Below are positions 10,351 through 30,754 of a stretch of 64,000 bases of DNA, piece by piece. The DNA lies in assembly GCF_000143415.4 (NCBI RefSeq), contig NW_003314304.1:1594730-1658729 (forward strand), in the 5' to 3' direction. This DNA comes from Selaginella moellendorffii (Eukaryota > Plantae > Lycopodiophyta). Below the pieces are notes generated by a model. It worked only from the letters and a program-made list of their open reading frames with translations. It was not told where the DNA came from and searched no databases. The stretch's first letter is position 1. Each line of letters begins with the position of its first letter. Position numbers and translations under genes: made by a program.

Positions 10351-13300
10351 CTAAATACCTTTGCAGACCCATATTTGTTTTCCCTCCAAAATTATAGGAT
10401 GAAGAGCAAAATATTTTTCCATGATTGTCTCCTGTTTTTCTTCTTTCCCAAATTTAGTTGTCACTAGCTTAAATATCTTTTGCACATCTTCTGCTTTGGG
10501 ATTTGTAGGTAGCTTGCTTTTAAGAAGACATGAATCCAAAAAACTTATGAGGCTTCCCTTGATCTCATCCACTATTGCATTCACTATCTCTCCAACACCA
10601 GCAAAATGTCTTCCAACTTTGGCCCCAATAAATAATAGGATCAATGTATATTTAAGTACTGGAGCAAATTTTTTGAGCCAATTTGGTGGGAGATCCAATT
10701 CAACACCTATAGAACTCTTCACTTGATGACCTTTAGAAGTTCCTTCAGGCCATTCACACAAGTAGTGAAGTCTACCATGTGTTCCCAGTATTTTACTGTA
10801 ATTTTTCCACATATTATTCTCATCAAGAATATATGGATATTTTGGGTAATCTGTCTCTAATTTCAATAATACTTGAAAACACGTTATATGGATTGCATTC
10901 ACTTTATCCATGATAAACTTGAGTCCATTCTTGAGCTTGTTAACGCTTACTTCAATATCATTAAGTTTTGTATCTAACTTGTCAAAACGGTTCTCCATTT
11001 TATCAAACATCTTCTTAATATATCTGAGGATTGCATCAAGTTTTGGGTCTTCAATGTTTGGAAACTCAACAATATCTGATGATGCTTTGGGAATTGTGAC
11101 TTCTCCAACCTCCTTATAGTCCTTCAAGAGTTCATGAAGTTCAACAAACTTATTCACCAGTTCATGTTTTTGCTCCTTAGGCATCAATAGCTTAGCCAAA
11201 GCATTCTCATCTGAGACCTTTAAATCATTATTCACATCCCAGCTCTCTGCTTCATGTGAATAATTCCAAGTGTGAGAGTATTCTAGACCTCTTTCTCTTG
11301 CTTCATATTTGACTTGCTTTAGTGGACAAACAACTGAAGCCCATAATTCTAATTTGTCCACCTTATTTAGTATCCTTCTCCATACATAACCACGTCTCAT
11401 CACATTTTCTTCAATTTCCAAAGATGGGCAATCCTCCATACATACCCCAATAATGCAATTTCTAATTTTTTCCATCCATCCTTCAGCTTCCTTTTCTAAA
11501 TCCAGCCTTGGTGTATTCTCTACCTCTTTTGGGTAGTAAATGATGACATCAACCCATTGCCTATCTTTCCAATTGTCTGTGTCTCCCCCAACTCTCACAA
11601 TTATCTCGATAAGGTTTTTTTTCAAAGCCACCCATCCATTCCCAAGCCTGAAACCTTTCTTGCTTAATTTGTAAAGTTTAACTTGGATCTTTGTGAAAAT
11701 ACTTGCAGGAAACAATTTCAGCTCCTTGTCTTTGCATTCAAACCTCCTGCCCCAGTAGTTGTGGTTTTTTTGAGTGTTAATTGACAATAAATATCCTGAA
11801 GGTGAATAGTCTTCTTGCAATAGTGTTGGCATTATCAACTCTTTGGGCAAGTTATGCCAATTCCCATCCCATGTTTCATCCCAAGGCAATATCACTCCCA
11901 TCTCATGGAGCACTCCAAGAATGTACTCCACTATTTTGTCTTGCTTCCCACATTGTTGCTTCAACTGATGTTTAACTCTATGTGTTTCCATTTTACTTTT
12001 GAGTTTGCTTGTCTCAGTATGTATGAAGAGTTGCACCACATCCCTCATAAACCATTGGACATCTAAGATGACAAATTGAGACACAATGTCGTCCTCTTCA
12101 TGTCCCAAGCCAAAGTAAATTGCATCACCAGAATCATGTAGAAATTGCAAGACGAACTTGAGAACATTCTTGGAACTCCTGTGAGGCAAGAGAATTTTGC
12201 CAACTTTTTCTAGGGGTATGACCTTCTTGTGACTTGGATCTTGTACCAATTTCCTCTTTGCTTTGAGACATTCCCGTGGTATTTGTTGCTGGGCTGACAG
12301 CAGTTCCTCCAAGCAACTCCCCAACATGGTTTTTATCCCCCTTAAATCTTTCACTTGAGTGGCCACCACCTCAAAACAAAAGTCATTCCCAAACTCAAGT
12401 ACTTGCCAATAGCCTTTGTCGGAGATTATTGCAGAAACCACCTCCTTTGGGTCAAAGTCGGGTTCTGGAGTGAAAAAGTTCAAGGCAATCAAGACCCTGG
12501 GCTTCCTTTTGGGTGAGGCTGATTGATGTGAAGCGATGAACCTCAGCCAGTAAACCAAATTCTGCTTGAAAACGTCACAATTGTCATCCTCCACCTTGCA
12601 TACGATCAAGAAGAGATCCTTCTCACTTCCTCTGAGAAAGTACTGGTGGAAAGCATGGAACTCTTCCTGTCCAGCCAGGTCGCAAATGAGCAGCTTTTGT
12701 TTGGTGGTCGCATAGACAAGTGGTTGCAGCTCAATGCCTGCTGTTGAAGCATGCCTTTGGAGACATGATGGAAACCAAGACACTCTGCGGCAGAGGTTTT
12801 TTTTTATTGTGGTCTTTCCAACCCTGCTAGCACCACACAAGAAGAGCTTTGCTGTTGACGGGTTGTCAAAGTCTTTGAATGCACTCTGCTGGAAGATTGC
12901 ATTCCGCTCTAAAAGACCAGAACACCTCTACTTGAAAGCTTCAGAAGCTTCGGAATCATTGCCTATATCAAGCTCTTCCACGAGGCTTTGGTAGTTTTCC
13001 TCCAAGGCAGCCAGAATTTGTCTTTTCTGTGCATCGCTATCAAGAAAAGGAGCCCTGAATCTGCGCACCTTGCATTTTGGATCCCCCAGCAACTGGCAAA
13101 GATCTTCCAGCTTTTCAATTTCTCCCTGACGTATTTCCAAGTCTTCAATGCTGCTTCCCAAAAGGCACCTCCATGGCAGTTCCGAGTGACATGACAAAGC
13201 TTTCAGATGCTTGCAGCTGGTGATAGCTTTCCAAAAGAGCTCCCCATTCGTGATTTTGCAATTGAATATAACCAAATGCTCCAGTTGGCTCTTCTCTATG

Positions 13301-14631
13301 CCCTCGGCAAACTCCAACGTTAACTCATCTTCTCCTCCCCATATTTCCAAATGGCGCAGCTTACAATGTGGACTTGAGAGGGCTGACCACAGACTGCTGT
13401 CACAGACCACTCCTCCTCCCTCGTTGCGAAAAGAAAGTTTAAGCTTGATCAGCTTGCAATTGGGATTTTGTAGCGCTTTGCCCAACCATCCACCACCATC
13501 ACCTGGATAAAGTGTAACGCTGAGTTCCTCCAAGCCACACTTAGCGCTGCTCAGGGCCTCACCCAGGCCCGTTGCATTGCTCAGGTCCTCACTCTGTCCT
13601 TGGCAATTTAAAACTGACAGGCTGGTGCCCTCCTGAAGAGCCTTGCATACCCATGGCAACACTCCAGCATCACTATCCCATAGGGATAGTCTTTGCAGCG
13701 AACAGCTTGGACTCGTGAGTGCCTTGAAGAGTGCTTCACCTGCCTCCTCTGGAAACGGTGCCACCAGTTCTACTAGCTTATTGAAAATGCCATTCTGAAA
13801 TGCCTGTTCCCACCCTTCCTTGCCAATGACGTTATCCAGGATGACTAACTCTTCCACCTTGCACTCCTGACTTGCCAGATCCCTACTCAATTTCCCAAAT
13901 CCTTCCACTGTCATCCTGTTCCTAGTCAAGACGAGACGTTTCAAGTTGTTTCCTGGTTTCCTAAGGAGTTGGCTAAGGAGAGTCTCTGGGTTCCCAACCT
14001 TGTCCAACCTGAGCTCTGTCAAGCAGTCGAGCTGAGCAAAGGCCAACTCAAGCTCCTGAGGTGGTGTGAGGATGTCTTTGCCTCCTTGCCAACCTAGCCC
14101 TTTCCAGACTTTGAATTCCTCCGTCATCAGTAGCTTCGCAAACCTCTGTACCTCAATCTGGCCAATATCCTGTCCCTGCTGAGGAGGAGCAATGCCCTCT
14201 GCCACCCTTTGCATTCGATCACTGGGAATGCCCAACCTACAAGCGACCCTGGCAGCGAAGTGGATGAATCTGATGTCGAGCTGTGGTACCAAAGCGGCCT
14301 TGAGAATGTCAATGTGAGCAGCAGCAGCAGCAGACGAACTGCCATCACCAGGAGCATCTCCCACATCCAGAGCCCTGTCTAAACAGGGCGGATTTGAAAT
14401 GCACCAGTTGAGCACACCAATCAGATCCTCCTCTGTGCCTCCAAACCTCTCGACGGTAGCACTCACCTCATCAACAAACTCACCTTTGGATGAGTGAAGC
14501 CTCTCCAAGATCTCCCCACAAAAAAACTGAATCGCATCGAAGTGCCGCTTGTTGTCCCGCTCCGCTGCGAGAGCCTCCTTGATCTCCTTGACAGAGTCAC
14601 AGCCGATCCACACTCGTCGCTCCTCCTCCAT
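10351..14631 (-). pseudogene. LRR-Roc-COR (ROCO, TORNADO1-like) gene, copy 1, interrupted by one nonsense codon
   Basis: ORFs 12928-14631 (LRRs) and 10351-12840 (GASRVGKTT, DLAGQEEF, COR) are in the same frame, separated by TAG at 12928-12930 where copy 2 has CAG. Confidence 0.9.
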
Positions 14632-14727
14632 GGAAGTTTGCCCTAGACCGAGTGATCATGAGTAAACTTCTCCCAGCTGTGGATAAGAAAGTAAGCACGA
14701 GTTAGTTTAGGGTTTAGAACAGATAAA

Positions 14728-17177
14728 ATGGGGAAGAAGGGGAAAGGGAAAAGAGAAGATCGTCGCCACGACAAGGTGTTAGACGAGGATGATATCGATG
14801 CGATCTTGGTAAGCAATCTCTGGCCAAAGACTCTCAATTGTTTTCCTTTTTGTCAGGCTAAACTCCACGAGGAGGAAGCAGAAATTCATGTCGATGAGAA
14901 TGTAGCAGCTCCTTCACCAATGCAATTGCTCTGTGCGTAAGAATTCGATTGAAATCTCCACTCTGGAAGCTCACATTCTCTAGACTTCTTTTCTTGCGTT
15001 TCAGGTGACTGTAAATCCAGTCAAGGACACTGAGCTGATCGTCTATGGAGGTGAATACTAACAACGGTGACAAGGTTTGTGGTTAGTTTCGCTACGGTGA
15101 TTTGATCTTCGTGTTTGCTATGCTAGACTTTACGTTTATGGTGATCTCTACCGATACAACATCGAGAAGAACGAGTGGAAGCCTGTCACCAGTCCAAACT
15201 CTCCTCCCCCGAGGCGGTTGCGTGGAAAAACTGGCTCTTCAGTTTTGGTATCCAGGAATTCTCTTGATTTTGGCAGTGTAGGTGGTGAATTCGGTTTCAT
15301 GACTATAAGGTGTGTTTCTAGCTGACTTACAAGAGAGTTCTTGCAGGATTTATGGAGACTGGATTTAAACACAAATATCTGGCGGGAGCAGCTTCAACTA
15401 AAAGGCTGTCCAGGTGCTCGTTCCGGACATAGATTGGTATGTATTGCGCTTCTAAACATAATCTTTATTTTTTTCTTTCTTGCCACAGAAACATAAACTT
15501 ATTCTATTTGGTGGATTTTATGACACGCTGAGGGAAGAAAGGTCGGCTGTTTCAGCAGTGTAGATGTTTAGTATTGAATTTTTGACACAGGTACTTCAAT
15601 AATCTTTAAGTGCTGGATTTAGACGATTATAAGGTTTGTTTCTGTCGCTCATCGTTCTTCCTTGTTTTTTAACAACTAAACTGATTTCCTTTTGCAGTGG
15701 CAAGAGATAAAACCCAAGCTTGGAGCTGCCTGGCCTTCAGCTGGAACTGGTTCTCAGCTTGCTGTTTATTTAGATGAGGTATTTGTCTACTAAAAGTATA
15801 GTTTTGCGTGTTGTGAACATTTTTTCTTTTCTAGATTTTCTTGTACGGTGGCTATTTCAAAGAGCCTGTGCTTGTTTTACATTCTCGTTTGGAGTTTTAG
15901 TTTTTCAATGTGTTTTGTGAAGGTGAAAAAATCCGGTATGGCTCCTGGCCAAGAGCAGGATTTTTGTCCACATCTTGTTTGGTGGTGTAGTTGATGCTGA
16001 TGAGTACGGTTTCAATGCATGCGTTGGAAAAACTAATGTCTTTTGCAGGTGATTCCCTGCACAGCGTTTTTATGATCGAGATGTATATGCTTTCCAGATG
16101 GTTTGTATCTCGTCGATTTTTTAAAAATTATCTAAGCACCATCGCTCGCAGGTATCCTTTGGAGCAAAGAGCCTAAAGATTAAGGTATGGCAATCTGAGA
16201 TTGTGTAGTGGTTAAGTGTGCATCCAAAGCAGAAGAAAGTGGTTGATCCAAATGTGGAAAATGCGTCTCAACGTTGAGCGTTCTGCTTGAAGGTTGTTGC
16301 CTTGTGGAAGAATGAATGCTGGAATGGTCGTTGGAAAGGATACTTTGTTTCTGTATGGAGGTATGAAAGAAGTCGGCAAAAAAAAAGTGACACGACGACC
16401 TTTCCTCGCTGGACCTTCGATGTGTGGAAGTGCATTATTGAGGTAGTATGATCGAGCCATCATCCAGCCTCATACTAATGTCTCAAGCAGGAAACACAAA
16501 GCGCGTGGATTGAAGCTAGTAAGGAGAAAGGCGAAACTGATGGTGACAACAGTGATGCTGGATCGATTAATAAAGGAAAAGACGAAGAGGACGATGACGA
16601 GGTAGTAAAAAAGAAGGATGTAAGAAAACTTGTCGGCTTCCTTTTGTATTCTAGGATGCAGTGGAGTCACTGTGAAGAGGCAGCTGCTATTCTTAGGGGC
16701 GAAGGCAAAAAGCTGACACAGAAAGCACGGAAATTAAATATCAATCCGAGCTGGGCCTGGCTGATTCCCAACAAACACTTTTGGTGAGTGCTGATAGTAG
16801 TTCATCTTCCTGTTTTGTTATTGATTTGTCTTTCAGCCTGGAGAAACGCTGAGAGATTTTTTCTCTTGGACGATCATGTATTGGCAAATGGCACCTTACG
16901 ATCACACCCAACACACTGGAAAGGTGACAACGCAGGTTTTCTTTCGCTCGTTCTTCATGCTCTATGCATCTATCAGGAGCTCAGGAAGGATGGATTTGAC
17001 TTGGCAAAGACACGCTACAGAGAACTTAAACCCGTCCTTGACAAGGTAAAGTGGTGTCTCAAGAAGGAATCCTCACAACAGCATTGTTTGATTTGCAGCT
17101 CGAGACTTGAAGCCGACCACAACGCCGAAGAGGAGGCTACCAAACCTTCCAAAGAGCGCAGCACGAAGAAACGATAA
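14728..17177 (+). pseudogene. KLHDC4: Kelch-repeat + DUF4110 protein (KLHDC4-like) pseudogene, copy 1
   Basis: Exons read MGKK..EDDIDAIL, ELIVYGGEY, GDLYRYNIEKNEWK, PGARSGHR, KLILFGGFYDT, ELRKDGFDLAKTRY; in-frame stop (NNL*) and deletions. Confidence 0.85.
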
Positions 17178-17339
17178 GGTCCGTGATCTCTGAAAGTTCT
17201 AGCTGAAAATTAAATGAATAGATTACAGTTATTCCCAGAGGTATGGTGAGTGCTTTCCTTTTCTAGAGGCAATGCCATTGACATGAAACCACTAGTATAC
17301 AATCTCTGCGTCGCATCATCAATGGTGATAGAAGGTTAA

Positions 17340-18490
17340 TTAATAACGACGATCCGAGTGCATGAAATGGATATCCAGGATAAAGTTTATATTTCCATGA
17401 TTGCTCGCAGAGTGTATGGGCCTGAGATATCCCATGGCTCGCTTTCGGTTGCCTTTCGTAAAGTGCAGAGTGAACACTCTCTCTACGCGGTCCATAAACT
17501 TTACTACCTGCAGTGCATTGGAGCAATGAAATTCCATCAGCAAGACCCTCAAAGGAAAATTTCTTCACACCTTCCGACGTTGCAAAGTGGTAACTGCCAG
17601 ACTCCAGTCACCTGAAAATTCAAAAAAACCTTTTTAGAAGTCTGCACTAATTTTCCATTTTCCATAAGTACCTTTTCATATTTCTTGCGGATCTTGACGA
17701 ATGCCATCATGTTCAAGGAGCTGCCAAGTAAGTTTTCAACACTTTGAGAACATGGATCAATCGTATAGAGGTCATTCACCTGAAGTTTCTTAGGAGTCGA
17801 AGCCCACGATAAAATTCGACAAAGGCCGTCTGGAGCATCTTGGCTGCTCGCTGAACCTTTCCTTTGTTGCCGGGGCTCCCCTTCAAGCTCTGAGATTCGT
17901 CATCTACAACATGGCAGAGATCAAACGATTCCAAGTTAAGTGCCACAGAATTAGAGGCTGCTAGAACGAACCTTGCATAGCGATGAGCTCTTCCATTTGG
18001 ATGTGAAGTTGCCGTGCTTGAGCATCGTACTCGTCTTCCTTGCATCTAAAAAAGTTGTCCACTTTGTTGAGCTGATCGTCAAGGCCGAAAAAGAAGCTCT
18101 TTTCGTGATCCGATCGAGTTCCAAACAGCTCCGTCTCGTAAAAATCCTCGCCATCTCCAATTCTCGTCTTGTGCACAACCTGATCATATTGAAGTGTTTT
18201 GTTTTGTCTTTACAGTCCAGACCATCATCACAAACCATGGACGTTTCCGAGGATATGGATTGTTCGCAGCAGCTGCTTAGAATGGCGCTGGGATTTTGCA
18301 GCAAGTTTTCAAGCTTGCTCTTGTCAACGGAGAAGACATTTGGATCGAACACCTTGTGCTGCTGGTTCTTGGTATGTAGGATCTGGGTTTTGATTCTCTT
18401 GACAACTTTCTTGAGCTGCTTGTAGTCGCAGTACTTCACCCGCCACTCTGGGACGAGCTGGCCCTCCAGCTGCTTCTGGAACTTCACCAT
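17340..18490 (-). pseudogene. PHO1: PHO1 copy 2: SPX-domain exons only, truncated before the EXS membrane domain
   Basis: Spliced exons [11 protein letters not shown].., QLNKVDNFFRCKEDE, AFVEFYRGLRLLRNF, SLNMMAFVKIRKKYEK, VVKFMDRVERVF..KRAMGYLRP; exon 5 is 41 nt (frameshift); homology ends at the unit junction ~17336. Confidence 0.8.
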
Positions 18491-19064
18491 GTCTGAAAGC
18501 TTGGATTACCTGAGGCGAACATCGTCAAGAAAACGATCAAGCAAGAGATGAAATACCTGGAGGAAATGGTGTCAAGTTCAGAATGCCTCTTCAAACTTTT
18601 CTGGCGCCTGTGCTCTGGAAGCACAGGAAGAACAGTGGCAGTGAGCATATGACGAGACAAATGGTGGCGTGGAATCATCAAATGCATTGTGCTGGGGAGG
18701 AGCACCACCAATTCTCACAAGAAAACAGCGCCTTAAGATCATCTCTGGAAAAAAGGGGGAAAGCCTTCGTTTCTCACCGACGCCAGCGAACAATTACATA
18801 AGAATACGTTATCCCGAGTGAAACTGACGCAGCAGAGTGCAAGAGGAGAGAAGAAGCAAGCGATCCATTGGCCTATGGAACTAAAAAAGGAAACAAAAGG
18901 ACAGGGAATGCAGGGGAATCTACAGGAAAAGCTGTCGTAAGTTACACACTTACACACACTCTCACACACTTCAACTCTTTTCTTGTCAACACGAGTAATT
19001 TATGCGAGCGAAAGGGAATGAAAGAATCATTTGAGCATCTAAAGCATGGAAGGAAGCGAGGCAC

Positions 19065-19922
19065 GATGATTCGTCCCTGCTTATTTTTTCGCCTATCGTT
19101 GGCTGTGTCTCCTACATTAGGACCAAAGGTCTTCCCGCATAACCATCAAGCCACGTTTCGTGGATTCGTAATGCACTCGCATAAGGCATGCCATCCTGTA
19201 AGAGAAGCAAAGCTGAATAACTCCACCAAGACAAAGCGATAAGAACGCCACCTCATATTGAAACACACGGCGGTTGTCAAGCGATAATTCAGCTCTTCGT
19301 CTGGAATGCACCAGCAAAAGAATAATGCATATGACTCAGAAAGAAGAACTTGACGTACCCGTTCGCTGCCACTTATCAAACTTGACAACCCAAGTAACGT
19401 CCCCAACCCCCATCAACCCACATACAGAAGTTCTTTCCCCTGGGAATACCGTGGAGGGGACGTAGAATCTCAACGCTTCTACGAAGATCGTCTTCTAGTT
19501 TCCACGGAGTGACCAGCGTTGAGTCAGGGGCCTGCCAGCCATTTCGTTGCTCAACCATCAAAAACTACTAAACACGAGGAACTTACCATTGGCCTTTTCA
19601 AGTGTTCAAACACCTCGTGGGAGCTTTCAACCTCGCCTCGTAACCATCTCACACTCCACGTCCGATCAACCCTTCGGTGTCCCCAGCAGTGAGCTGGCTC
19701 AGTAAGTCGGCATCCCTGGGCGAAACACAAGGATCAAACTTGAACTCTCGGATAGCTTGTAAGATTCCCGAAGCGCATCTTTCAGTGCCACGAAAGATCT
19801 TGGGATTGTCTTTGGCATTATCAAGGTACCACTACGTAAGATCTTCAAACGCATTCCCGACCTGAGATCGTCAGTGAGTGAGTGAGTGATCAATCGACTT
19901 CAAGAACTGAAACGTCTTTGAC
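19065..19922 (-). pseudogene. SPP: Duplicated 3' fragment of sucrose-phosphatase gene
   Basis: Near-identical to 34405-35213 ([32 protein letters not shown]; VVKFDKWQ). Confidence 0.8.
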
Positions 19923-20120
19923 GTCCAGCGCCTCCTCCTGATTGAGCACCGAGATCCACGTCGCGCTCTCCTTGGCAGTTATCTTGTCTTGCAAGCACTT
20001 GGACTGCCTCACGAGCTTCCTGATCTTCCCGATATCCGGGGACATGTGTCGGATCACCGCAGTGAGAACTCCAACCTTCCACACCTTCTTGAGATCATGG
20101 GGCTTCTTATACGGATCCAT
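19890..20120 (-). CDS. 76-aa ORF: EIN3 start codon fused in frame to the EIN3 DNA-binding core helices (probable remnant, possible microprotein)
   Basis: [63 protein letters not shown] matches the EIN3 family; same upstream leader as the copy-1 EIN3. Confidence 0.6.
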
Positions 20121-20942: not shown

Positions 20943-23900
20943 CTCTAGTTTATTATACGCCTCCAATCCTTCCTCATGATCAACGAGACAACCAACCCCG
21001 CGTAGAGTACGTGGGGTACGACGTTTGAAACTCCATTCATTGGGTTTTGTTAAAGAGAATAAAAGACAGAACGCCACTGTAGCTAAACCTAGAAATCAAA
21101 AACTAAACTACATCGTGCCATTATTGGTTTGAGATGCAACACCTTTTACTCGGGCACCCTAGCGAATAATAGAATATTTTCTGCCGGAGAATATTCTGGA
21201 ATCGGCCCGTGGTCCACATGATAGAGGGCAGTGACAAGAGGTTTTGGGCCCCCCTCAAAATGCTTATTTTTATTGTTCGCTGGGAGTCCATGTTCCCTCT
21301 TTAGCTCCCATGTGTGGCCTTTGTTTTTGTTGCCAGCCAAACAAACACACAGAAAGTTTGAAGGAGAGAGAGAGTGTGCAAAAATCTGAGAGGAGAGAAA
21401 GAAATGGCACCGGCTTTGATTGACTTTGCCGCGCTCCACTTCTTTGATCCCTCCATCTCCATCTCGTCCTTTTTCTTTTTCTACTCGGACTCGGACGATT
21501 CGATCCATCTCATGTTTCGCTCGAAGTCGATGGATCACTGCCCAATCACTCCATCACTTCTTGTCGACTGGAAAAGTCTTTAAATTCCTCTCGCTGATGC
21601 GATCAGCACGGCATTAGCCTGAGATCAAGGCCGCGGATCATCCAGCAAAGTCTAAGCTTTTTGCCAAGGATGTGACAAGCTAACGTGTTGTCCAGGCGCT
21701 TACAGGTTCCATTGTTTTTCCAATCACAATTCTTTTTCCTCCGGCGACCGGCACGAAAGTCGTCCGAAGCAACCCAAACTGGAAACAAGATACATGCCCA
21801 GTTTCTCGGACAGATTTCCTCAAGCCCGGCAGAACACGGAAGACGAAGAAATTCGTTAAAAAATCCACGAGCAAGCAGCAAGAGAGAGAGAGAGAGAGAG
21901 AGACATAAAAAACTTTGCCAAGCCCAAAGTCGTTGATGTTAAGCTAGGCCGTGCTTGAAGCGCGTGATGATGATCATGAAAGTTCCTGTCAAGATGCTCG
22001 GTGGATTCTCCGTGTCTCCAGCTAGAGACTTATCGACACACTATCTATCTGGTAATGTTTCAAAACGAGTAAACTAATCAGTGTTTGTTGGGAATGAATG
22101 TTTGTGCTGCTTGGCCACTTGCACTGCGGCGGCAGCAGAGGAGGATGTTTTGCGGCAACTATACCTGACTAAATCGAAGTACTTTAATTGCAATTTGCAA
22201 GATCACAAGTACTAGTCCTGAAGAAAAACAGCAAGATGTGCTTATAATCAAGGCATTCTTGCAACGCAAGTGGAAATTCACTATGTTTACCTGGGCTTTC
22301 CAAGGATGCTTCATCTGAATCGCATAGTGTCACCCTGCTGTATGAAAAAGACAAGAGAAAAATTCTTACTCACTAGAGTTTGTTAATTTTACTCTAGCTA
22401 TTACAAATTTTCCATTGTTGATACTCACTGTAGCTTCATTCAACTCCACACTTTTTTACTTAATTAGAGATGTAAAGTTTTGTCTCATGTTCTAGAATTT
22501 TGTCTATAGTTACAAAACCACAAGCTTATCCATAAATGGATTGATATTACTATAAACAATTAAAGAAAACAACTTGAAAGACGATTAATAGGGTTGAAAT
22601 ATAGAGGGAAAGGGCTCATGAATAAAAATACATTTTATTTTTCAAATGCACTCATTTTTCCAATCGGTTAAAGGTCCTGGGATATTTGGGGTTAAGTGTT
22701 TCTGGGTTGGGTGACTTCCCGGGAATTTTAAATTCAAGAGTTTATAATTACTTCAGTGCAGAAGTATAATCTTAACTTCTCTCTCTTCCTTTCAGCTTCT
22801 TTTCTTTGCTTTTCAATATGTAGTGAGTGAAATGCTTTCACTCGTAAGTTTTTCATAAGTGAGTGAATAAAACTTGATTAACTTTTATAACCTACTTTTC
22901 CAAAGTTACATTTAAGATGGCCAAGTGAGCAGTGTGATGTGTTCTTACAACCAAGTGAATAGTTTTTTAACTTGTGCTAATCAAAGTTTGCTCATAGATA
23001 TAATACAAAATAAGTGGGGATGCAATAAATTTATTCATTTCTCTTCTCGAGAAAAATCATTCTTTTACTTCTTGTTAAATATATAGTTTTTGATTGTGAT
23101 GTTCTTCACTTTTTTTGAAGGGTATACTCCCTTAGCCAAAGATGCAATTGTTGATTCTATGTTATAGGTAAAAATTTGATAATTAGAATTGTTGCACGTT
23201 TCAATATTAATTTTGGGACCAACTTCTAAAGTTTTACCAAGATTATTTTAAATTAATAAGTTCAAAACTTTTTCTTGACAATCATGAGAAGTCAAAATAT
23301 CACCAAGGTTAACTTTAACCATATAATATCCAATCTCATTACAACCAAAATGTGGCTTAGATTATTCAATGGCAATTCAAGAGCTGGTCCTCTTTAACAA
23401 GTTCCATATATAAATAATATAGTGATTTACCCTTTCTTTTTTTGTAAGTTATTGTTTAAAAAGAGTTTATTTTAAATTCACTTAAATCTTTCTCTTGAGA
23501 AACTACTTAGCTTGGCATAAAATCTTAGCAACCCAATACTAAATACTAGTCCAAAAATTTGAGAAAAACATATAAACCAGTATAGTAATGATAATTTGAA
23601 GCTTTTTCTTGCCAATTTACAAGGTATAATAAATGATTGAGATGTTGGTTCTCTAAACAAAGATGAGATAAAGATTGGGAGTGATCTTAGGCAAACATCT
23701 CTAAGCCAAACTTCTTCATTTGGCTCATAAACTTGGTTGAGTTTGCAAAGGTTTCGATAAAGTTTATTTTTGAATTTTTGCATGTCATAAATGCTTATCA
23801 AGGCAATGTAAATAGGAGTATACTATAATTATGGCTTGTCATTTTTGTTATGGTGGTGGTGATTGCAACTATCACCATGCTTTCAACATCTTTATAAATG

Positions 23901-26216
23901 ATTAATTTTTTTTTACTTTAGGATCATCTAAAGGAGTCTCACTTATAATTTCTATAGGCCCTGATATTAATTTGGGTGTTTCCTAACTTTAAGATGTGTT
24001 TTTGTAACCACATCAACTTTGTACTTGGTCTAAATGCTCTATGTGTCTAGTTCCACTTTTGGATACCCAAATGACTAGATAACTTTTTATGAAGTCCAAA
24101 TTTAAAAACTTATATTGGTATTAGAAAAGTGTAAGGTGTGACTCTATTAGTTGATTAAAAAAATCACACCACATGTTAAGATTGATATTTAATAGGTTTA
24201 GTTTACTCTAATTTCAACTCGAGGGGTAAGGTGTTAAAAGAGTAAGGCTCTTAGAAGAGCCCTACTCTTGCAAAAAAACATGATGGATTATAAACAACCA
24301 AAGATAATAACTTAAAAAATTATTAATATTATTTTAAATATAGAAATGTACTCTTTGTTCCAATTAGTTGTAAGTATTAGGTTATTTGAGATTAAGCATC
24401 TTTAAATAGTATTGGGTTAGATGACCTTCTAGAAAGCCCAAATTCAGGAGATTATAGTGCCATAAATAATATAAGTTAATGTTTGTAAAGAAACTAGCAA
24501 GAAAGAAAACAATTTAAAATTAAACAACCTTTTAAAAATGAAATATTTACTAGAATGTTCAAAATAAGTATTTAGAAAGCATTTTTATTAGAGCTACTCT
24601 CAAGTAATACTTGATGTGTTGCAAATGATTTCATAGTAAAAAATATCTTTATACTTCATTTTTAAAATAATAATTAGTGGTGTTTAATACATATTTTGTA
24701 TTTTCTAAACAATATCTAGAGACACTCAAAAACCTTTTGCTGTTAAATTATTGTCATTCAAGCACTTGTTTACAATAGTTAAAACACAATACAATGTTTG
24801 GTTTTATGGGATGGTAAATATATGTAATTGAGGAGAGTAAACAGATTTCTATATAGACTTTAGTAAGTAAATGGAATTGTGAACAATGACAATTTTCATA
24901 AGTCTTTAAACTGTAGTTTGTAACATATTTTAGCTAAATATTAATTTAAAAAATAAGTTGAAGTTGGTAAAGATAATATAAAGTTATCTCCTACAGTATG
25001 TGATGATAAATAACAATTAAGCATTTGTATTTAGTTTTGAAATGCATTACCTCAAAAGGTTTATTAATAATAATTAACTTTATTCCTAGAATTGTTTTAC
25101 CAAAGATGCCAAAATGAAAAAATGCCACTAACATGAGATCATCTGAGTAGCTTTTCTTTAAAGCATTCAATACTAAAACATCAGAATAAATATAAAAATT
25201 ATTTTATAGCAATATGCAAAGATACCTCATCGACTTATATCAAGAAATGTAGCATAATCATAGTAAAAATGCCCTACATAGTCTTTGTTAAATAAAACTA
25301 AAATCATAGTTATATTTGAATGTAAAATAGCTTTGTAAATCTATACTGTTTTATAATCCAAGGTTATAGGATGGATATTAAAATATTTGGCCATGATTGT
25401 CTTTTGATCAATTTCTTTCACAATTTTAGTCTTCTTATCAAAATATGATTAATATGACATCATTTGACTAGCTTTTCCTTCACTTGAATTATTAAACATT
25501 CAACACTGAAATAAACTTGGAACATTAGAATAAACATGAAATAATATTTTAAAGCAATAATGCAAATTTACCTCATTGACTTCTATTACAAAATATAGCC
25601 CAATCATTCCAAAGACATATAGCAATAACTTTATAAAGCATATTTATTTACTTTCATCTTGCCAAATCATCTCGTAAAAATATAGATTGATGATCTGATT
25701 TAGAATGGTTTTTGTTAGATAAAACCAAAAACTTAAATGTTAAATACCTTTGTAGACCCATATTTTTCTTTCATCCAGGATTATGGGATGAAAAACAAAA
25801 CATATGATTAATGATTTACTTTAAATACCCTACATAGCTTCTGTTAGATAAAACTAAAAGTATGGATACATTTCAATATAAAATACCTTTGTAAATATAT
25901 ATTGTTTTATCATCTAAATTATAAGATAAAAAATAAATTATTTGGTAGTTTTTCCTTCATTTAAAGCATTAAAAATTCAACACTGAAATGAACTTGAAAC
26001 ATTAGAATAAACAGGAAAGAATAATTTGGAGTTATAATGCAAACTTACCTCCTTAACTTCTGCTATAAAAAATACCCCAATCATACCAAAGACATATAGT
26101 AATAACTATATAAAGCATGTTTATTTACCTTTGTTTTACTAAACCACCTCATAAAAATTTAGATTGATGATCTGCTTTAAAATGGTGTTTGTTAGAAAAA
26201 ACTAAAAACTTAAATA

Positions 26217-29200
26217 TTAAATACCTTTGCAGACCCATATTTTTCTTCCCTCTAAGATTGTGGGATGAAGAGCAAAATGTTTTTCCATGATTGTCTCCTG
26301 TTTTTCTTCTTTCCCAATTGTAGTTGTCACTAGCTTAAATATCTCTTGCACATCTTCTGCTTTGGGATTTGTAGTTAACTTATTTTTGAGAAGACATGAA
26401 TCCAAAAAGCTTATGAGGCTTCCCTTGATCTCATCCACCATTGCATTCATTATTTCTCCAACACCAGCAAAATGTCCTCCAACTTTAGCCCCAATAAATA
26501 ATAGGATCAATGTATGTTTAAATATTGGAGCAAATTTCTTGAGCCAGTTTGGTGGGAGATCCAATTCAACACCTACAGAACTCTTCACTTGATGACCTTT
26601 AAAAGTTCCTTGAGGCCATTCACACAAGTAGTGAAGTTTAACATGTGTTCCCAATATTTTGCTGTAATTTTTCCACCTATTATTCTCATCAAGAATATAT
26701 GGATATTTTGGGCAATCTGTCTCCAATTTCAATAATACTTGAAAACACGTTGTATGGATTGCATTCACTTTATCCATGATAGACTTGAGTCCATTCTTGA
26801 GCTCGTTAAGGCTTACTTCAATGTTATCAAGTTTTGTATCCAACTTGTCAAACCGATTCTCCATTTTATCAAACTTCTTATCAAAATATCTAAAAATTGC
26901 ATCGAGTTTTGGGTCTTCAATGTTTGGAAACTCAACAACATTTAATGATGCTTTGGGAATTGTGACTTCTCCAACCTCCTCATAGTCCTTTAAGAGTTCA
27001 TGAAGCTCAACAAACTTATTCACCACTTCATATTTTTGCTCATTAGGCATCAATAACTTGGCCAAAGCATTCTCATCTGAGACCTTCAAATCGTTAATCA
27101 CATCCCAACTCTCTGCTTCATGTGAATCATTCCAAGTGTGAGAGTAGTCTAGACCGCTTTCTCTTGCTTCACATTTGACTTTCTTTAGTGGATAAATAAC
27201 TGCATCCCATGATTTTGGTTTGCCCACATTATTTAGTATCCTTCTCCACACATAACCACGTCTCATCACATTTTCTTCAATTTCCAAAAATGGGCAATCC
27301 TCTATACATACCCCAATAATGCAATTTCTAATTTTTTCCATCCATCCTTCAGCTTCTTTTTCCAAATCCGGCCTTGGTGCATTCTCTACCTTTTTTGGGT
27401 AGTAGATGATGACATCAACCCATTGCCTATCTTTCCAATTGTCTGTGTCTCCCCCAACTCTAACAATTGTCTTGATAAGGTTTTCTTTCAAAGCCACCCA
27501 TCCATTCCCAGGCCTAAAACCTTTCTTGCTTAATTTGTGAAGTTTAACTTGGATCTTTGTGAAAATACTTGCAGGAAACAATTTCAAGTCCTTGTCTTTG
27601 CATTCAAACCTCCTGCCCCAGTAGTTGTGGTTTTTTTGAGTGTCAATTGGCACTGAGGGTGACAATAAATATTCTGGAGGTGAATATTCTTCTTGCAATA
27701 ATGTTGGCATTATCGGCTCTTTGGGCAAGTTATGCCAATTCCCATCCCATTTATCATCCCAAGGCAATATCACTCCCATCTCATGGAGCACTCCAAGAAT
27801 GTACTCCACTATTTTGTCTTGGTTCCCACATTGTTGCTTCAACTGATGTTTAACTCTGTGTGTTTCCATTTGACTTTTGAATTTGCTTGTCTCAGTATGT
27901 ATGAAGAGTTGCACCACATCCCTCATAAACCATTGGACATCTAAGATGACAAATTGAGACACAATGTCGTCCTCTTCATGTCCCAAGCCAAAGTAAATTG
28001 CATCACCAGAATCATGTAGAAATTGCAAGACGAATTTGAGAACATTCTTGGAACTCCTGTGAGGCAAGAGAATTTTGCCAACTTTTTCTAGGGGTATGAC
28101 CTTCTTGTGACTTGGATCTTGTACCAATTTCCTCTTTGCTTTGAGACATTCCCGTGGTATTTGTTGCTGGGCTGACAGCAGTTCCTCCAAGCAACTCCCC
28201 AACATGGTTTTTATCCCCCTTAAATCTTTCACTTGAGTGGCCACCACCTCAAAACAAAAGTCATTCCCAAACTCAAGTACTTGCCAATAGCCTTTGTCGG
28301 AGATTATTGCAGAAACCACCTCCTTTGGGTCAAAGTCGGGTTCTGGAGTGAAAAAGTTCAAGGCAATCAAGACCCTGGGCTTCCTTTTGGGTGAGGCTGA
28401 TTGATGTGAAGCGATGAACCTCAGCCAGTAAACCAAATTCTGCTTGAAAACGTCACAATTGTCATCCTCCACCTTGCATACGATCAAGAAGAGATCCTTC
28501 TCACTTCCTCTGAGAAAGTACTGGTGGAAAGCATGGAACTCTTCCTGTCCAGCCAGGTCGCAAATGAGCAGCTTTTGTTTGGTGGTCGCATAGACAAGTG
28601 GTTGCAGCTCAATGCCTGCTGTTGAAGCATGCCTTTGGAGACATGATGGAAACCAAGACACTCTGCGGCAGAGGTTGTTTTTTATTGTGGTCTTTCCAAC
28701 CCTGCTATCACCACACAAGAAGAGTTTTGCTGTTGATGGGTTGTCAAAGTCCTTGAATGCACTCTTCTGGAAGATTGCATTCCGCTCTAAAAGACCAGAA
28801 CACCTCTGCTTGAAAGCTTCAGAAGCTTCGGAATCACTGCCTATATCAAGCTCTTCCACGAGGCTTTGGTAGTTTTCCTCCAGGGCAGCCAGAATTTGTC
28901 TTTTCTGTGCATCACTATCAAGAAAACGAGCCCTGAATCTGCGCACCTTGCATTTTGGATCCCCCAGCAACTGGCAAAGCTCTTCCAGCTTTTCAATTTC
29001 TTCCTGACGTATTTCCAAGTCTTCAATGCTGCTTCCCAAAAGGCACCTCCATGGCAGCTCCGACTCACATGACAAAGCTTTCAGAGACTTGCAGCTGGTG
29101 ATAGCTTTCCAAAAGGGCTCCCCATTCGTGATTTTGCAGCTCCATATACCCAAATGCTCCAGTTGGCTCTTCTCTATGCCCTCGGCAAACTCCAACGGTA

Positions 29201-30527
29201 ACTCTGTCCTGCTACCCCATATTTTCAAATGGCGCAGCTTACAATGTGGACTTGAGAGAGCTGACCACAGACTGCTGTCACAGACCATTCCTCCTCCCTC
29301 GTTGAACCAATCAAGGTCAAGGTTGAGCTTGATCAGCTTGCAATTGGGATTTTGTAGCGCTCTGCCCAACCATCCACCACCATCACCTGGATAAAGTCTA
29401 ACGCAGAGTTCCTCCAAGCCACACTTAGCGCTGCACAGGGCCTCACCCAGGCCCGTTGCATTGCTCAGGTCCTCACTCTGTCTCATTTCTCGGCAATCTA
29501 AAACTGACAGGCTGGTGCCCTCCTGAAGAGCCTTGCATACCCATGGCAACACTCCAGCATCAGTACCCCAAAATAGGTATAGTCTTTGCAGCGAACAGTT
29601 TGGACTCGTGAGTGCCTTGAAGAGTGCTTCACCTGCCTCCTCTGGAAACGAATATGCCTCCAGTGCCACTAGCTTATTGAAAATGCCATTCTGAAATGCC
29701 TGTTCCCACCCTTCCTTGTCAATGTCCTTATCTTCGATGACTAACTCTTCCACCTTGCACTCCTGACTTGCCAGATCCCTACTCAATTTCCCAAATCCTT
29801 CCACTGTCATCCTGTTCCCCCGCAATTCGAGACGTTTCAAGTTGTTTCCTGCTTTCCTAAGGAGTTGGCTAAGGAGAGTCTCTGGGTTCCCAACCTTGTC
29901 CAACCAGAGCTCTGTCAAGCAGTCGAGCTGAGCAAAGGCCAACTCAAGCTCCTGAGGTGGTGTGAGGATGTCTTTGCCTCCCCAACGGAAATCTAGGCCT
30001 TTCAAGACTTTGAATTCCTCTGTCATCATCAGTAGCTTTGCAAACCTCTGCACCTCAATCTGGCCAATGTCCTGTCCCTGCTGAGGAGGAGCAATGCCCT
30101 CTGCCACCCTTTGCATCCGATCACTGGGAATGCCCAACCTACAAGCGACCCTGGCAGCGAAGTTGATGAATCTGATGTCGAGCTGTGGTACCAAAGCGGC
30201 CTTGAGAATGTCAATGTGAGCAGCAGCAGCAGACGAACTGCCATCACCAGGAGCATCTCCCACATCCAGAGCCACGTCTAAACTGGGTGGATTTGAAATG
30301 CACCAGTTGAGCACACAAATCAGATCCTCCTCTGTGCCTCCAAACCTCTCGACGGCAGCATTCACCTTATCAACAAACTCACCTTTGGATGGGACAAGCT
30401 CCCACATGTGCCCACAAGGAAACGCAATCGCATTGAAGTGCCGCTTGTTGTCCCGCTTCGCTGCGAGAGCCTCCTTGATCTCCTTGACAGAGAAACAGTA
30501 GATCCACTCTCGTCGCTCCTCCTCCAT
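26217..30527 (-). CDS. Intact intronless LRR-Roc-COR (ROCO, TORNADO1-like) protein, 1436 aa
   Basis: RI-like LRRs (LQRLYL, LEELCV, LRHLKI), P-loop GDSRVGKTT, switch I STAGIEL, DLAGQEEF, COR motif LQFLHDSGDAIYF..VILDVQWF, coiled coil DKMENRFDKLDTKLDNIE, C-terminal LHYLCE..H..P.WL module. Confidence 0.92.
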   Translation of the reverse strand: MEEERREWIYCFSVKEIKEALAAKRDNKRHFNAIAFPCGHMWELVPSKGEFVDKVNAAVERFGGTEEDLICVLNWCISNPPSLDVALDVGDAPGDGSSSAAAAHIDILKAALVPQLDIRFINFAARVACRLGIPSDRMQRVAEGIAPPQQGQDIGQIEVQRFAKLLMMTEEFKVLKGLDFRWGGKDILTPPQELELAFAQLDCLTELWLDKVGNPETLLSQLLRKAGNNLKRLELRGNRMTVEGFGKLSRDLASQECKVEELVIEDKDIDKEGWEQAFQNGIFNKLVALEAYSFPEEAGEALFKALTSPNCSLQRLYLFWGTDAGVLPWVCKALQEGTSLSVLDCREMRQSEDLSNATGLGEALCSAKCGLEELCVRLYPGDGGGWLGRALQNPNCKLIKLNLDLDWFNEGGGMVCDSSLWSALSSPHCKLRHLKIWGSRTELPLEFAEGIEKSQLEHLGIWSCKITNGEPFWKAITSCKSLKALSCESELPWRCLLGSSIEDLEIRQEEIEKLEELCQLLGDPKCKVRRFRARFLDSDAQKRQILAALEENYQSLVEELDIGSDSEASEAFKQRCSGLLERNAIFQKSAFKDFDNPSTAKLFLCGDSRVGKTTIKNNLCRRVSWFPSCLQRHASTAGIELQPLVYATTKQKLLICDLAGQEEFHAFHQYFLRGSEKDLFLIVCKVEDDNCDVFKQNLVYWLRFIASHQSASPKRKPRVLIALNFFTPEPDFDPKEVVSAIISDKGYWQVLEFGNDFCFEVVATQVKDLRGIKTMLGSCLEELLSAQQQIPRECLKAKRKLVQDPSHKKVIPLEKVGKILLPHRSSKNVLKFVLQFLHDSGDAIYFGLGHEEDDIVSQFVILDVQWFMRDVVQLFIHTETSKFKSQMETHRVKHQLKQQCGNQDKIVEYILGVLHEMGVILPWDDKWDGNWHNLPKEPIMPTLLQEEYSPPEYLLSPSVPIDTQKNHNYWGRRFECKDKDLKLFPASIFTKIQVKLHKLSKKGFRPGNGWVALKENLIKTIVRVGGDTDNWKDRQWVDVIIYYPKKVENAPRPDLEKEAEGWMEKIRNCIIGVCIEDCPFLEIEENVMRRGYVWRRILNNVGKPKSWDAVIYPLKKVKCEARESGLDYSHTWNDSHEAESWDVINDLKVSDENALAKLLMPNEQKYEVVNKFVELHELLKDYEEVGEVTIPKASLNVVEFPNIEDPKLDAIFRYFDKKFDKMENRFDKLDTKLDNIEVSLNELKNGLKSIMDKVNAIHTTCFQVLLKLETDCPKYPYILDENNRWKNYSKILGTHVKLHYLCEWPQGTFKGHQVKSSVGVELDLPPNWLKKFAPIFKHTLILLFIGAKVGGHFAGVGEIMNAMVDEIKGSLISFLDSCLLKNKLTTNPKAEDVQEIFKLVTTTIGKEEKQETIMEKHFALHPTILEGRKIWVCKGI

Positions 30528-30705: not shown

Positions 30706-30754
30706 CAAGTGGACAGTACAAGCAAGAGTTAATTTAGGTTTTAGGGTTCTTCGA

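What the first reader, a model, noticed from the sequence alone, without database searches (positions are those of the whole stretch)
10351..30527. Tandem ROCO (LRR-Roc-COR) genes with hypervariable LRR surface and frozen GTPase: candidate non-NLR immune receptor family
Seen: differences between copies cluster at the xxLxLxx positions of almost every LRR and are mostly radical or indels. Examples: LTELRLD/LTELWLD, LKRLVLTRN/LKRLELRGN, VEELVILDN/VEELVIEDK, LVELVAP/LVALEAYS, LQRLSLW/LQRLYLFW, LSVLNCQG/LSVLDCREM, LEELSVT/LEELCVR, LIKLKLSFR/LIKLNLDLDWF, LRHLEIWGGED/LRHLKIWGSRT, LEHLVIFNC/LEHLGIWSC. The intervening helices are nearly identical, and ~260 aa from LCRRVSW to HTETSK are identical. Known: this pattern typifies diversifying selection on the concave ligand face of NLR/RLP receptors. 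Angiosperm TORNADO1 is a low-copy developmental ROCO, and expanded ROCO LRR-GTPases have been proposed as immune receptors in brown algae. Inference: a birth-and-death family of GTPase-switched sensors in a land plant.
Basis: partly seen in the sequence, partly recalled or inferred. Interest (0 to 1): 0.9.

Follow-up and report, generated by a model that had tools for sequence, protein, structure and literature searches.

The report
Hypervariable LRR-ROCO gene pair, Selaginella
Two tandem spikemoss genes (one with a nonsense codon) encode LRR-GTPase proteins whose predicted binding surface changes much faster than neutral DNA, as in immune receptors, but the "frozen" GTPase part is a recent gene-conversion copy and no function has been tested.

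Summary
The window is the last 64 kb of Selaginella moellendorffii scaffold GL377608.1. It carries two TORNADO1-like ROCO genes (RNI-type LRR, Roc, COR, TORNADO1-type C-terminal domain) inside a 16-18 kb tandem duplication.

- **Copies:** copy B is intact.
- **LRR differences:** 34 of 60 residues at motif positions 5, 7, 8 and 9 of LxxLxLxx differ between A and B, against 21 of 350 elsewhere (p = 2e-19).
- **Site models:** with five more family copies, my own codon models give M2a vs M1a 2dlnL = 373, with omega about 14 for 13% of sites. These sites sit on or just after the predicted beta-strands.
- **Haplotypes:** the two assembled haplotypes are 98-99% alike in the flanks but only about 94% alike in the LRR.
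- **"Frozen GTPase":** this is not purifying selection. The 795-nt tract has one synonymous difference, which points to gene conversion. Family-wide omega in Roc-COR is about 0.8-1.2.
- **Function:** all nine A/B coding indels are in frame, and RNA-library contigs match the B/L002 locus.

An immune role is plausible (about 2 NLRs are reported for this plant) but untested. This scan reached the same reading earlier on other pieces of this genome.

The parts
26225..30527 (-). Copy B, exon 1: intact ROCO coding sequence (codons 1-1434 plus the first base of the next codon)
   Evidence: ORF and translation; Pfam Roc and COR-A; splice donor GT at 26224-26223
26172..26224 (-). Copy B, 53-nt GT..AG intron near the 3' end. 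An alternative AG lies 3 nt upstream, and some gene models use it.
   Evidence: Joint skipping 53 nt in RNA-library contigs of runs X1 and X2; sequence read directly; gene-model lengths of paralogs fit introns of 53 or 50 nt
26149..26171 (-). Copy B, exon 2: last 7 codons and stop. The spliced product ends ..WVCKDHQSKFL, restoring a His that is conserved in distant relatives.
   Evidence: W.C..H/C conserved at the C-terminus of fern, liverwort and flax relatives
30006..30527 (-). Copy B N-terminal region (residues 1-174). It has two short strands followed by helices and about 10 sites with P>0.9 for omega>1.
   Evidence: AF2 model; site model
28773..30005 (-). Copy B LRR domain: 15 RNI-type repeats (residues 175-585) with hypervariable residues at motif positions 5, 7, 8 and 9
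   Evidence: Repeat anchors with spacing 19-33 residues; AF2 pLDDT 79.5 with strands at anchor+2..+6; Foldseek hits to ribonuclease inhibitor and NLRP LRRs; selected sites
28389..28727 (-). Copy B Roc domain (residues 601-713). P-loop GxxxxGKT, switch-I Thr and DxxGQ are present. NKxD is replaced by NFFT.
   Evidence: Pfam; alignment to M. barkeri Roco2 4wnr; plant relatives
27783..28157 (-). Copy B COR-A domain (residues 791-915)
   Evidence: Pfam E 1.1e-7, 32.2 bits, below the curated cut-off of 35.3
27882..28676 (-). Copy B side of the gene-conversion tract shared with copy A (795 nt, 1 difference)
   Evidence: Longest identical runs of 641 and 153 nt; dS 0.006 against 0.06-0.17 elsewhere
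26226..27140 (-). Copy B TORNADO1-type C-terminal domain (residues 1130-1434): coiled coil followed by an alpha/beta module with a hydrophobic Gly-rich helix (1339-1357)
   Evidence: HMMER hits to fern, liverwort and other Selaginella ROCO proteins; Foldseek hit to A. thaliana TORNADO1 residues 1072-1365, E 1.6e-5; no PDB match
10359..14631 (-). Copy A, exon 1: same frame throughout, 9 in-frame indels relative to B, and one nonsense codon
   Evidence: Identical to locus L005, so it comes from the same assembly
12928..12930 (-). Copy A premature stop TAG (codon 568, between the LRR and Roc). The six other copies aligned at this codon have CAG.
12004..12798 (-). Copy A side of the conversion tract
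10298..10358 (-). Copy A homologous 53-nt intron (10306-10358) and short exon 2 (10298-10305, ..KDH then stop). Inferred by homology with copy B.
   Evidence: Sequence read directly. There is no RNA evidence specific to copy A.
1..35186 (.). Tandem segmental duplication that carries the two genes: window 1-19900 matches 18319-35186 at 88-98% identity, with a period of about 15.9-18 kb
   Evidence: Self-BLAST. The same unit, with EIN3/S6PP/SPX and Kelch/DUF4110 gene fragments, flanks other family members

Best explanation
The region holds two members of a young, Selaginella-specific tandem family of TORNADO1-like ROCO proteins. Each has an N-terminal region, 15 RNI-type LRRs, Roc, COR and a TORNADO1-type C-terminal domain.

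Shown:
- The array grew by duplication of a 16-18 kb unit.
- The copies keep exchanging sequence. This homogenises the LRR framework and Roc-COR, including a 795-nt tract that is identical between A and B.
- Residues on and just after each LRR beta-strand (motif positions 5, 7, 8, 9) accumulate radical replacements and 1-4-codon in-frame indels much faster than silent or flanking DNA.
- Alleles on the two haplotypes differ as much in the LRR as paralogs do.
- Reading frames are maintained by selection. Copy A has only very recently acquired a nonsense codon.

Inferred: the concave LRR face binds a fast-changing, probably non-self ligand. Binding is relayed through the Roc-COR nucleotide switch to the conserved C-terminal domain as output. 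This would make the family intracellular recognition receptors, most likely for biotic interactions, working like NLRs without being NLRs.
For: - **Identity and architecture:**
- **Positional clustering:**. For A vs B alone, 34/60 against 21/350 (p = 2e-19). For sites with P>0.95, 31/60 against 6/350 (p = 4e-24).
- **Site models:** N-term+LRR, 7 copies, M0 omega 1.66; M2a vs M1a 2dlnL = 373; omega2 = 14; p2 = 0.13.
- **Rate comparisons:** dN at hypervariable codons is 0.44. Framework dS is 0.043. A/B flanking divergence is 0.04-0.10.
- **No local mutation hotspot:** unambiguous synonymous differences are 4.0% per codon at the interleaved conserved codons against 2.4% in the framework. That is only a 1.7-fold rise, while nonsynonymous change is about 9-fold higher.
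- **Haplotype pairs:** L001/L004 flanks are 99.35% and 98.4% identical, LRR 93.75%. B/L002 flanks are 97-98%, LRR 94.3%.
- **ORF maintenance:** 9 of 9 coding indels are multiples of 3, against 2 of 13 in the upstream flank. Random placement of the 230 A/B substitutions gives 9.1 stops on average, and P(<=1 stop) = 0.0012.
- **Conversion and recombination:**, and (Rm = 37, 10 and 38 in the three regions). GC3 falls from 0.54 to 0.33 along the gene.
- **Transcription:** zero-mismatch RNA-library contigs fit B or its haplotype partner L002 and none of the other copies except L007 in one short piece, and a spliced 53-nt intron is seen.
- **Context:** about 2 NLRs are reported for this species (PMC3782705).
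Against: - No functional, expression-induction or binding data exist.
- Only 7-8 sequences from one diploid individual were used.
- Recombination is pervasive. It violates the single-tree assumption of site models and inflates their LRT.
- The codon models are my own implementation with NEB posteriors, not PAML or HyPhy.
- For A vs B alone, omega within the hypervariable codons is about 1.0-1.1 when their own noisy, path-dependent dS is used.
- Constraint outside the LRR is weak (Roc-COR omega 0.76-1.18, C-term 0.43-0.66). Several copies are broken: A has a stop, L006 a frameshift, L007 a gap or fragment.
- The G4 motif is not canonical, so a GTP switch is assumed rather than shown.
- No model coordinates were available, so 'concave face' rests on secondary-structure register plus textbook LRR geometry.
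- The RNA runs are flagged 'RNA?', and contigs cannot exclude DNA carry-over except at the spliced joint. The contig carrying that joint has 2-4 mismatches to B.
Confidence: 0.6

Rival explanations
1. Diversifying selection is real, but the function is not immunity. The family could serve a TORNADO1-like developmental or membrane-signalling pathway with a fast-evolving partner, self/non-self recognition in reproduction, or control of selfish elements.
For: The only characterised plant ROCO, TORNADO1, is developmental (PMC4104024). The C-terminal domain is shared with TORNADO1. Nothing in the window links the genes to defence.
Against: Tandem arrays with hypervariable LRR faces, extreme allelic divergence and birth-and-death are the hallmark of recognition receptors for pathogens. 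The family is a young lineage-specific expansion, separate from the angiosperm TORNADO1 branch.
Confidence: 0.2
2. Relaxed constraint: the copies are redundant young duplicates drifting towards pseudogenes. Exposed LRR residues simply tolerate change (omega rising to 1, not above it).
For: Copy A has a stop, L006 a frameshift, and L007 is partial. Omega outside the LRR is high. A vs B omega within the hypervariable codons is about 1 by NG86.
Against: - M2a fits far better than the nearly-neutral M1a (2dlnL = 373, omega2 = 14).
- dN at hypervariable codons is 4-10 times the flanking non-coding and framework silent divergence.
- All 9 coding indels are in frame and stops are about 9-fold depleted.
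- The framework between patches is nearly invariant.
Confidence: 0.08
3. Mutational origin: short-tract conversion between repeats or paralogs, or slippage, creates the patchy differences without positive selection.
For: Patch variants are shared in mosaic fashion between copies. For example, the repeat at residue 398 is identical in A and L003, and the repeat at 431 falls into groups. Rm is high. Indels cluster in the loops after the strands.
Against: A mutational process should raise silent change in the same patches. Interleaved conserved codons show only a 1.7-fold rise against about 9-fold for nonsynonymous change. Alternate residues (+4, +6) vary while +3 and +5 never do. Shuffling redistributes variants but does not explain their origin.
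Confidence: 0.08
4. Assembly artefact: the two copies, or their differences, come from mis-assembled haplotypes of one gene.
For: The v1 assembly contains both haplotypes (PMC7801247). The window has 314 Ns.
Against: Both copies lie on one scaffold 11.6 kb apart within colinear duplicated units. A separate haplotype scaffold carries a further, different allele, L002. RNA-library contigs match B exactly over copy-specific positions.
Confidence: 0.03

Closest known systems
TORNADO1 (TRN1/LOP1) of Arabidopsis thaliana, Q9FJ57, and angiosperm orthologs
   Same: Same architecture: RNI-type LRR, Roc, COR and the same C-terminal domain. The support is a Foldseek match to residues 1072-1365 (E 1.6e-5) and shared motifs with flax TORNADO1 (..LCE....H.V.., the Gly-rich hydrophobic helix, FGL....WVC..H). 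NCBI already names several family members 'protein TORNADO 1' or 'ROCO family protein'.
   Different: Only about 26% identity to angiosperm TORNADO1 in Roc-COR, measured through the Selaginella relative P0035. The family sits on a different branch, a lycophyte/fern clade. It is multi-copy, tandem and hypervariable, whereas TORNADO1 is low-copy and developmental (my knowledge; PMC4104024). Its G4 motif is NFFT, where flax TORNADO1 has THFD.
Brown-algal LRR-ROCO candidate immune receptors (Ectocarpus, Saccharina; Zambounis 2012; PMC11378527)
   Same: LRR-Roc-COR proteins with positively selected residues on the concave LRR face, proposed as non-NLR immune receptors.
   Different: The algal diversity comes from shuffling of 24-residue LRR exons and alternative splicing. 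Here the whole LRR lies in one exon, the repeats are 25-33-residue RNI-type, and diversity comes from substitutions, small in-frame indels and gene conversion among tandem genes. The algal proteins were not compared for the TORNADO1-type C-terminal domain.
Plant NLR resistance-gene clusters (NB-ARC-LRR)
   Same: Tandem birth-and-death arrays, hypervariable solvent-exposed xxLxLxx residues, sequence exchange among paralogs, and very divergent alleles. The logic of sensor LRR plus P-loop NTPase switch plus output domain is also shared.
   Different: No NB-ARC or NACHT domain. The NTPase is a Ras-like Roc with COR. The LRR is at the N-terminus. The LRR type is RNI/NLRC-like, as in animal NLRs, not the plant-specific type.
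Bacterial/archaeal Roco proteins and LRRK2/MFHAS1 (structures 4wnr, 6hlu, 3dpu, LRRK2 Roc)
   Same: Roc-COR tandem detectable by sequence. The LRR-Roc-COR order is that of C. tepidum Roco and MFHAS1.
   Different: No kinase domain, a non-canonical G4, a plant-specific C-terminal domain, and hypervariable LRRs.

Membership tests
ROCO (Roc-COR) proteins | Ras-like Roc domain | tested here: met
   Pfam PF08477, 44.4 bits against a cut-off of 27, E 2.3e-11, residues 601-713. G1 GxxxxGKT, switch-I Thr and G3 DxxGQ align to M. barkeri Roco2.
ROCO (Roc-COR) proteins | COR domain directly after Roc | tested here: inconclusive
   COR-A scores 32.2 bits, just under the curated 35.3 (E 1.1e-7), at residues 791-915. 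The precomputed Pfam list for paralogs includes PF16095. COR-B is not detected by Pfam in copy B and is only suggested by Atlas features. It is present in flax TORNADO1.
ROCO (Roc-COR) proteins | Guanine-nucleotide binding (G4 NKxD/THxD) | tested here: not met
   The motif is NFFT in all family copies and LN[FY][FH] in lycophyte/fern relatives. Biochemical binding cannot be tested here.
TORNADO1-like plant ROCO | N-terminal RNI-type LRR + Roc-COR + TORNADO1 C-terminal domain | tested here: met
   The AF2 LRR model matches ribonuclease inhibitor and NLRP LRRs. The C-terminal model matches Q9FJ57 residues 1072-1365. Motifs are shared with flax TORNADO1.
TORNADO1-like plant ROCO | Orthology to angiosperm TRN1 (low copy, developmental role) | tested here: not met
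   In the tree the family is a tight Selaginella-only clade inside a lycophyte/fern clade. Angiosperm TORNADO1 groups with a liverwort sequence elsewhere (quick search, long branches). A developmental role cannot be tested.
NLR / STAND immune receptors | NB-ARC or NACHT NTPase domain | tested here: not met
   No such Pfam hit at E <= 0.1. Only the LRR resembles NLRC3/NLRP.
NLR / STAND immune receptors | Diversifying selection on exposed LRR residues in clustered paralogs | tested here: met
Brown-algal LRR-ROCO candidate receptors | LRR diversity by shuffling of single-repeat exons | tested here: not met
   The LRR domain lies in one uninterrupted exon. The only intron is 53 nt at the 3' end.
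Brown-algal LRR-ROCO candidate receptors | Positively selected sites on the concave LRR face | tested here: met
   Selected sites lie at strand positions +4 and +6 and the following +7 and +8. Geometry is inferred from secondary structure, not from coordinates.

The most novel reading that the evidence does not exclude
Selaginella, which has almost no NLRs, uses an expanded, hypervariable family of TORNADO1-like LRR-Roc-COR proteins as intracellular immune receptors. The Roc-COR module replaces NB-ARC as the switch. The conserved TORNADO1-type C-terminal domain acts as the signalling or execution module. Its fold is absent from the PDB, it carries a Gly-rich hydrophobic helix and a Cys/His cluster, and the same fold is predicted in fungal RNI-like proteins, kinases and bacterial Roc/COR proteins. 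On this reading, angiosperm TORNADO1 would be a domesticated, single-copy remnant of an ancient receptor class.
Probability: 0.35. Interest if true: 0.9.

Novelty: new variant of a known kind. Interest (0 to 1): 0.7.

Why it matters
Intracellular pathogen recognition in land plants is attributed almost wholly to NLRs. Selaginella moellendorffii is reported to have about 2 of them (PMC3782705). A review even states that among plants only flowering plants have ROCO genes (PMC4104024). A clustered, expressed LRR-Roc-COR family with an NLR-like evolutionary signature gives a concrete, testable candidate for what fills that gap. It also suggests a function for the unexplained TORNADO1 architecture and its uncharacterised C-terminal domain. 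The full-text searches here for ROCO or TORNADO with Selaginella found no paper describing this family. The nearest precedent is the brown-algal ROCO proposal. The correction on the 'frozen GTPase' matters for method: identity between tandem paralogs must be checked at silent sites before it is read as constraint.

Tried and rejected
- **Within-partition dS.** NG86 dS inside the hypervariable codons (0.20 family-wide, 0.3 for A/B) first suggested omega of about 1-2. Counting only codon pairs that encode the same residue gave 5.3% against 2.4% in the framework. The high dS is therefore largely a multi-hit path artefact. The true value lies between the two measures, and omega stays above 1 either way.
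- **Purifying selection on Roc-COR.** Rejected, because the tract is identical at silent sites and family omega is about 1.
- **C-terminal domain as COR-B.** Rejected. In flax TORNADO1, COR-B is at 864-1001 and the shared domain starts near 1070.
- **C-terminal domain as a transmembrane segment.** The best 19-residue Kyte-Doolittle mean is 1.48, below the usual 1.6 threshold. This is not supported but not excluded.
- **Searches that returned little.** The word-index search with the C-terminal region found only the eight Selaginella family proteins. The PDB fold search of the C-terminal model had no hit at E <= 0.001. The Atlas shape search returned only the ROCO cluster. P0007 could not be located.
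- **Concave-face mapping.** Model coordinates are not exposed, so no geometric mapping was possible.
- **Read evidence.** Read laying returned only assembled contigs, so there is no strand, depth or induction information, and copy A's stop could not be checked independently. Locus L005 is the same assembly.

Full report
**Where the window is.** Locus L005, fetched for protein P0005, is 100% identical to window 298-24631. It comes from Selaginella moellendorffii scaffold GL377608.1, positions 1595027-1619360. The window is therefore the last 64 kb of that scaffold (assembly GCA_000143415.2). That assembly holds both haplotypes of one plant (PMC7801247, PMC3095285).

**Anatomy.**
- Two long minus-strand reading frames lie 15.9 kb apart. 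Copy B (26217-30527) has 1436 intact codons. Copy A (10351-14631) has 1426 codons in one frame, interrupted by a single TAG at codon 568. All six other family copies aligned at that codon have CAG.
- Pfam finds Roc (residues 601-713) and COR-A (791-915, just under the curated cut-off).
- An AlphaFold2 model of residues 1-600 (pLDDT 79.5, pTM 0.75) is an alternating strand/helix solenoid. Its best PDB matches are ribonuclease inhibitor and NLRP LRR domains.
- Fifteen repeats, mostly spaced 25-33 residues apart (one gap of 19), can be anchored on LxxLxLxx. The predicted strands cover anchor+2 to +6.
- The genes sit inside a tandem segmental duplication: window 1-19900 matches 18319-35186 at 88-98%. 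The unit also carries EIN3/S6PP/SPX and Kelch/DUF4110 gene fragments, and it recurs around other family members.
- RNA-library contigs show a 53-nt GT..AG intron (26172-26224) spliced out five bases before the ORF stop. The real product of B therefore ends ..WVCKDHQSKFL. Copy A has the homologous intron. The spliced end restores a His that is conserved in distant relatives.

**The observation.**
- Within the LRR domain, A and B differ at 34 of the 60 residues at offsets +4, +6, +7, +8, against 21 of 350 elsewhere (p = 2e-19).
- With the textbook xxLxLxx positions fixed in advance, the counts are 29/75 against 26/335 (p = 3e-10).
- All nine coding indels are multiples of three. Only 2 of 13 are in the upstream flank.

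**More copies.** A protein search returned eight Selaginella relatives, named 'ROCO family protein' or 'protein TORNADO 1' by NCBI. I fetched their loci. I then built a codon alignment of A, B, L001-L004, L006 (frameshifted near codon 85) and L007 (interrupted by an N gap). The same positions vary in all of them.

My own GY94/F3x4 site models gave the following:

| Region | Copies | M0 omega | M2a vs M1a 2dlnL | Positive class |
|---|---|---|---|---|
| Residues 1-600 (N-term + LRR) | 7 | 1.66 | 373 | omega 14, 13% of sites |
| Roc-COR | 8 | 1.18 | 37 | omega 7.3, 11% of sites |
| C-terminal part | 8 | 0.66 | 15 | omega 2.0, 32% of sites |

In the LRR, sites with posterior >0.95 fall at offsets +4, +6, +7, +8 in 31 of 60 cases, against 6 of 350 elsewhere (p = 4e-24). 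Offsets +3 and +5, the core leucines, are never selected.

**Is it selection, a mutational effect or drift?**
- Family-wide dN at the hypervariable codons is 0.44. Framework dS is 0.043. A/B flanks differ by 4-10%.
- NG86 dS inside those codons is inflated (0.20) by multi-hit paths. Counting only same-residue codon pairs gives 5.3% there, 4.0% at the interleaved conserved codons and 2.4% in the framework. Silent change in the patches is thus raised about 2-fold, not the roughly 9-fold seen for replacements. That argues against a local mutation hotspot.
- Random placement of the 230 A/B substitutions produces 9.1 stops on average, and P(<=1 stop) = 0.0012. Together with the in-frame indels, this shows the frames have been kept open by selection.
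- Caveats: recombination is pervasive (Hudson-Kaplan Rm of 37, 10 and 38 in the three regions), which inflates site-model LRTs. For A vs B alone, omega within the hypervariable codons is about 1 if their own dS is used.

**Haplotype comparison.**
- L001 and L004 are colinear over 21 kb. Their flanks are 99.35% and 98.4% identical, but their LRR regions only 93.75%.
- B and L002 (on scaffold GL377709.1) have flanks of 97-98%, Roc-COR and C-terminal parts of 98.2%, and LRR of 94.3%.
- Alleles therefore differ in the LRR as much as paralogs do.

**The 'frozen GTPase'.**
- The identical stretch is identical as DNA. There are runs of 641 and 153 nt separated by one synonymous change (B 27882-28676, A 12004-12798). 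About 12.7 silent differences are expected (p = 4e-5).
- This is a conversion or recent-exchange tract, not evidence of constraint.
- Across the family, Roc-COR and the LRR framework have 3-4 times lower silent divergence than the C-terminal part.
- GC3 falls from 0.54 to 0.33 along the gene, as expected if GC-biased conversion acts on the 5' two-thirds. That last step is inference.

**The switch and the output.**
- G1, the switch-I Thr and G3 are intact. G4 is NFFT where M. barkeri Roco2 has NKID.
- Lycophyte and fern relatives share this loss, and flax TORNADO1 has THFD. Nucleotide specificity is therefore open.
- An exhaustive HMMER search matched residues 1130-1436 to ROCO-type proteins of a fern, a liverwort and another Selaginella gene, plus short stand-alone proteins.
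- The AF2 model is confident only for the last ~180 residues. It matches A. thaliana TORNADO1 residues 1072-1365 (E 1.6e-5) and nothing in the PDB.
- AFDB cluster hits include fungal 'RNI-like' proteins, kinases and bacterial Roc/COR proteins.
- The domain lies beyond COR-B. It contains invariant Cys/Glu, His, Trp and Cys residues and a Gly-rich hydrophobic helix. Its function is unknown.

**Phylogeny.** In a quick ML tree the family is a tight, short-branched Selaginella clade inside a lycophyte/fern group. Angiosperm TORNADO1 lies elsewhere, with a long liverwort branch. The family is TORNADO1-like in architecture but not an ortholog.

**Expression.** Contigs from four RNA-labelled studies match B without mismatch over stretches where A and most other copies differ at 5-21 positions. 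They fit B or its partner L002. The spliced joint is the one feature DNA contamination cannot explain.

**Literature.**
- Full-text searches for ROCO or TORNADO with Selaginella found nothing on this family.
- A 2014 review states that only flowering plants have plant ROCOs.
- Brown-algal ROCOs with positively selected concave LRR sites are the nearest precedent.
- S. moellendorffii is listed with about 2 NLRs.
- Earlier notes of this scan reached the same reading on other pieces of this genome. Two neighbouring notes correspond to loci L003 and L001 used here.

**Verdict.** Diversifying selection on the LRR face is well supported. The receptor or immune role and the GTP switch remain inference.

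Noticed in passing
window 9460-9937, 10084-10414, 25469-25800, 25935-26278: A ~330-bp piece covering the 3' end and 3' UTR of the ROCO gene is duplicated again just downstream of each copy (83-86% identity). tblastn sees 20-35-residue C-terminal fragments at 9460-9564 and 9877-9936.
   Followed up: no
window 42213-45499 vs 58111-61297: Inverted duplication of about 3 kb at 85-90% identity.
   Followed up: no
window 15045-20120 and the matching part of the second unit (~30.8-35.2 kb): The duplicated unit carries gene models built from EIN3 DNA-binding, sucrose-phosphatase C-terminal, SPX and Kelch/DUF4110 pieces. These are probably chimeric fragments copied along with the ROCO gene, and the same neighbours flank L002, L003, L006 and L007.
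   Followed up: partly
copy A and copy B coding sequence: Strong 5'-to-3' compositional gradient inside one exon: GC3 is 0.54 (N-term+LRR), 0.49 (Roc-COR) and 0.33 (C-terminal part). It parallels the drop in sequence exchange and is compatible with GC-biased gene conversion.
   Followed up: partly
copy B residues 724-727 (window 28347-28358): The guanine-specificity motif NKxD is replaced by NFFT in every family copy and by LN[FY][FH] in fern and other Selaginella relatives. Flax TORNADO1 keeps THFD.
   Followed up: partly
L006:18264-21341 (scaffold GL377737.1): A second, fragmentary ROCO copy (pieces of the N-terminus, Roc and C-terminus, 83-91% identity) lies about 4 kb downstream of the frameshifted L006 gene. 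This is further evidence of birth-and-death turnover.
   Followed up: no
C-terminal model mf2132c82f35e, residues ~130-335 (B residues ~1230-1434): AFDB cluster matches (E 1e-9 to 1e-3) to unnamed proteins, including fungal 'RNI-like' proteins with the domain at their N-terminus, kinases, an ADP-ribosyltransferase-domain protein and bacterial Roc/COR proteins. This may be a widespread uncharacterised signalling or effector module.
   Followed up: partly
window 26172-26177 (copy B) and gene models P0001 vs P0002: Tandem acceptor (aaag/cag) at the 3' intron. Annotated paralogs use either AG (50- or 53-nt intron), giving ..CKADH.. or ..CKDH..
   Followed up: partly
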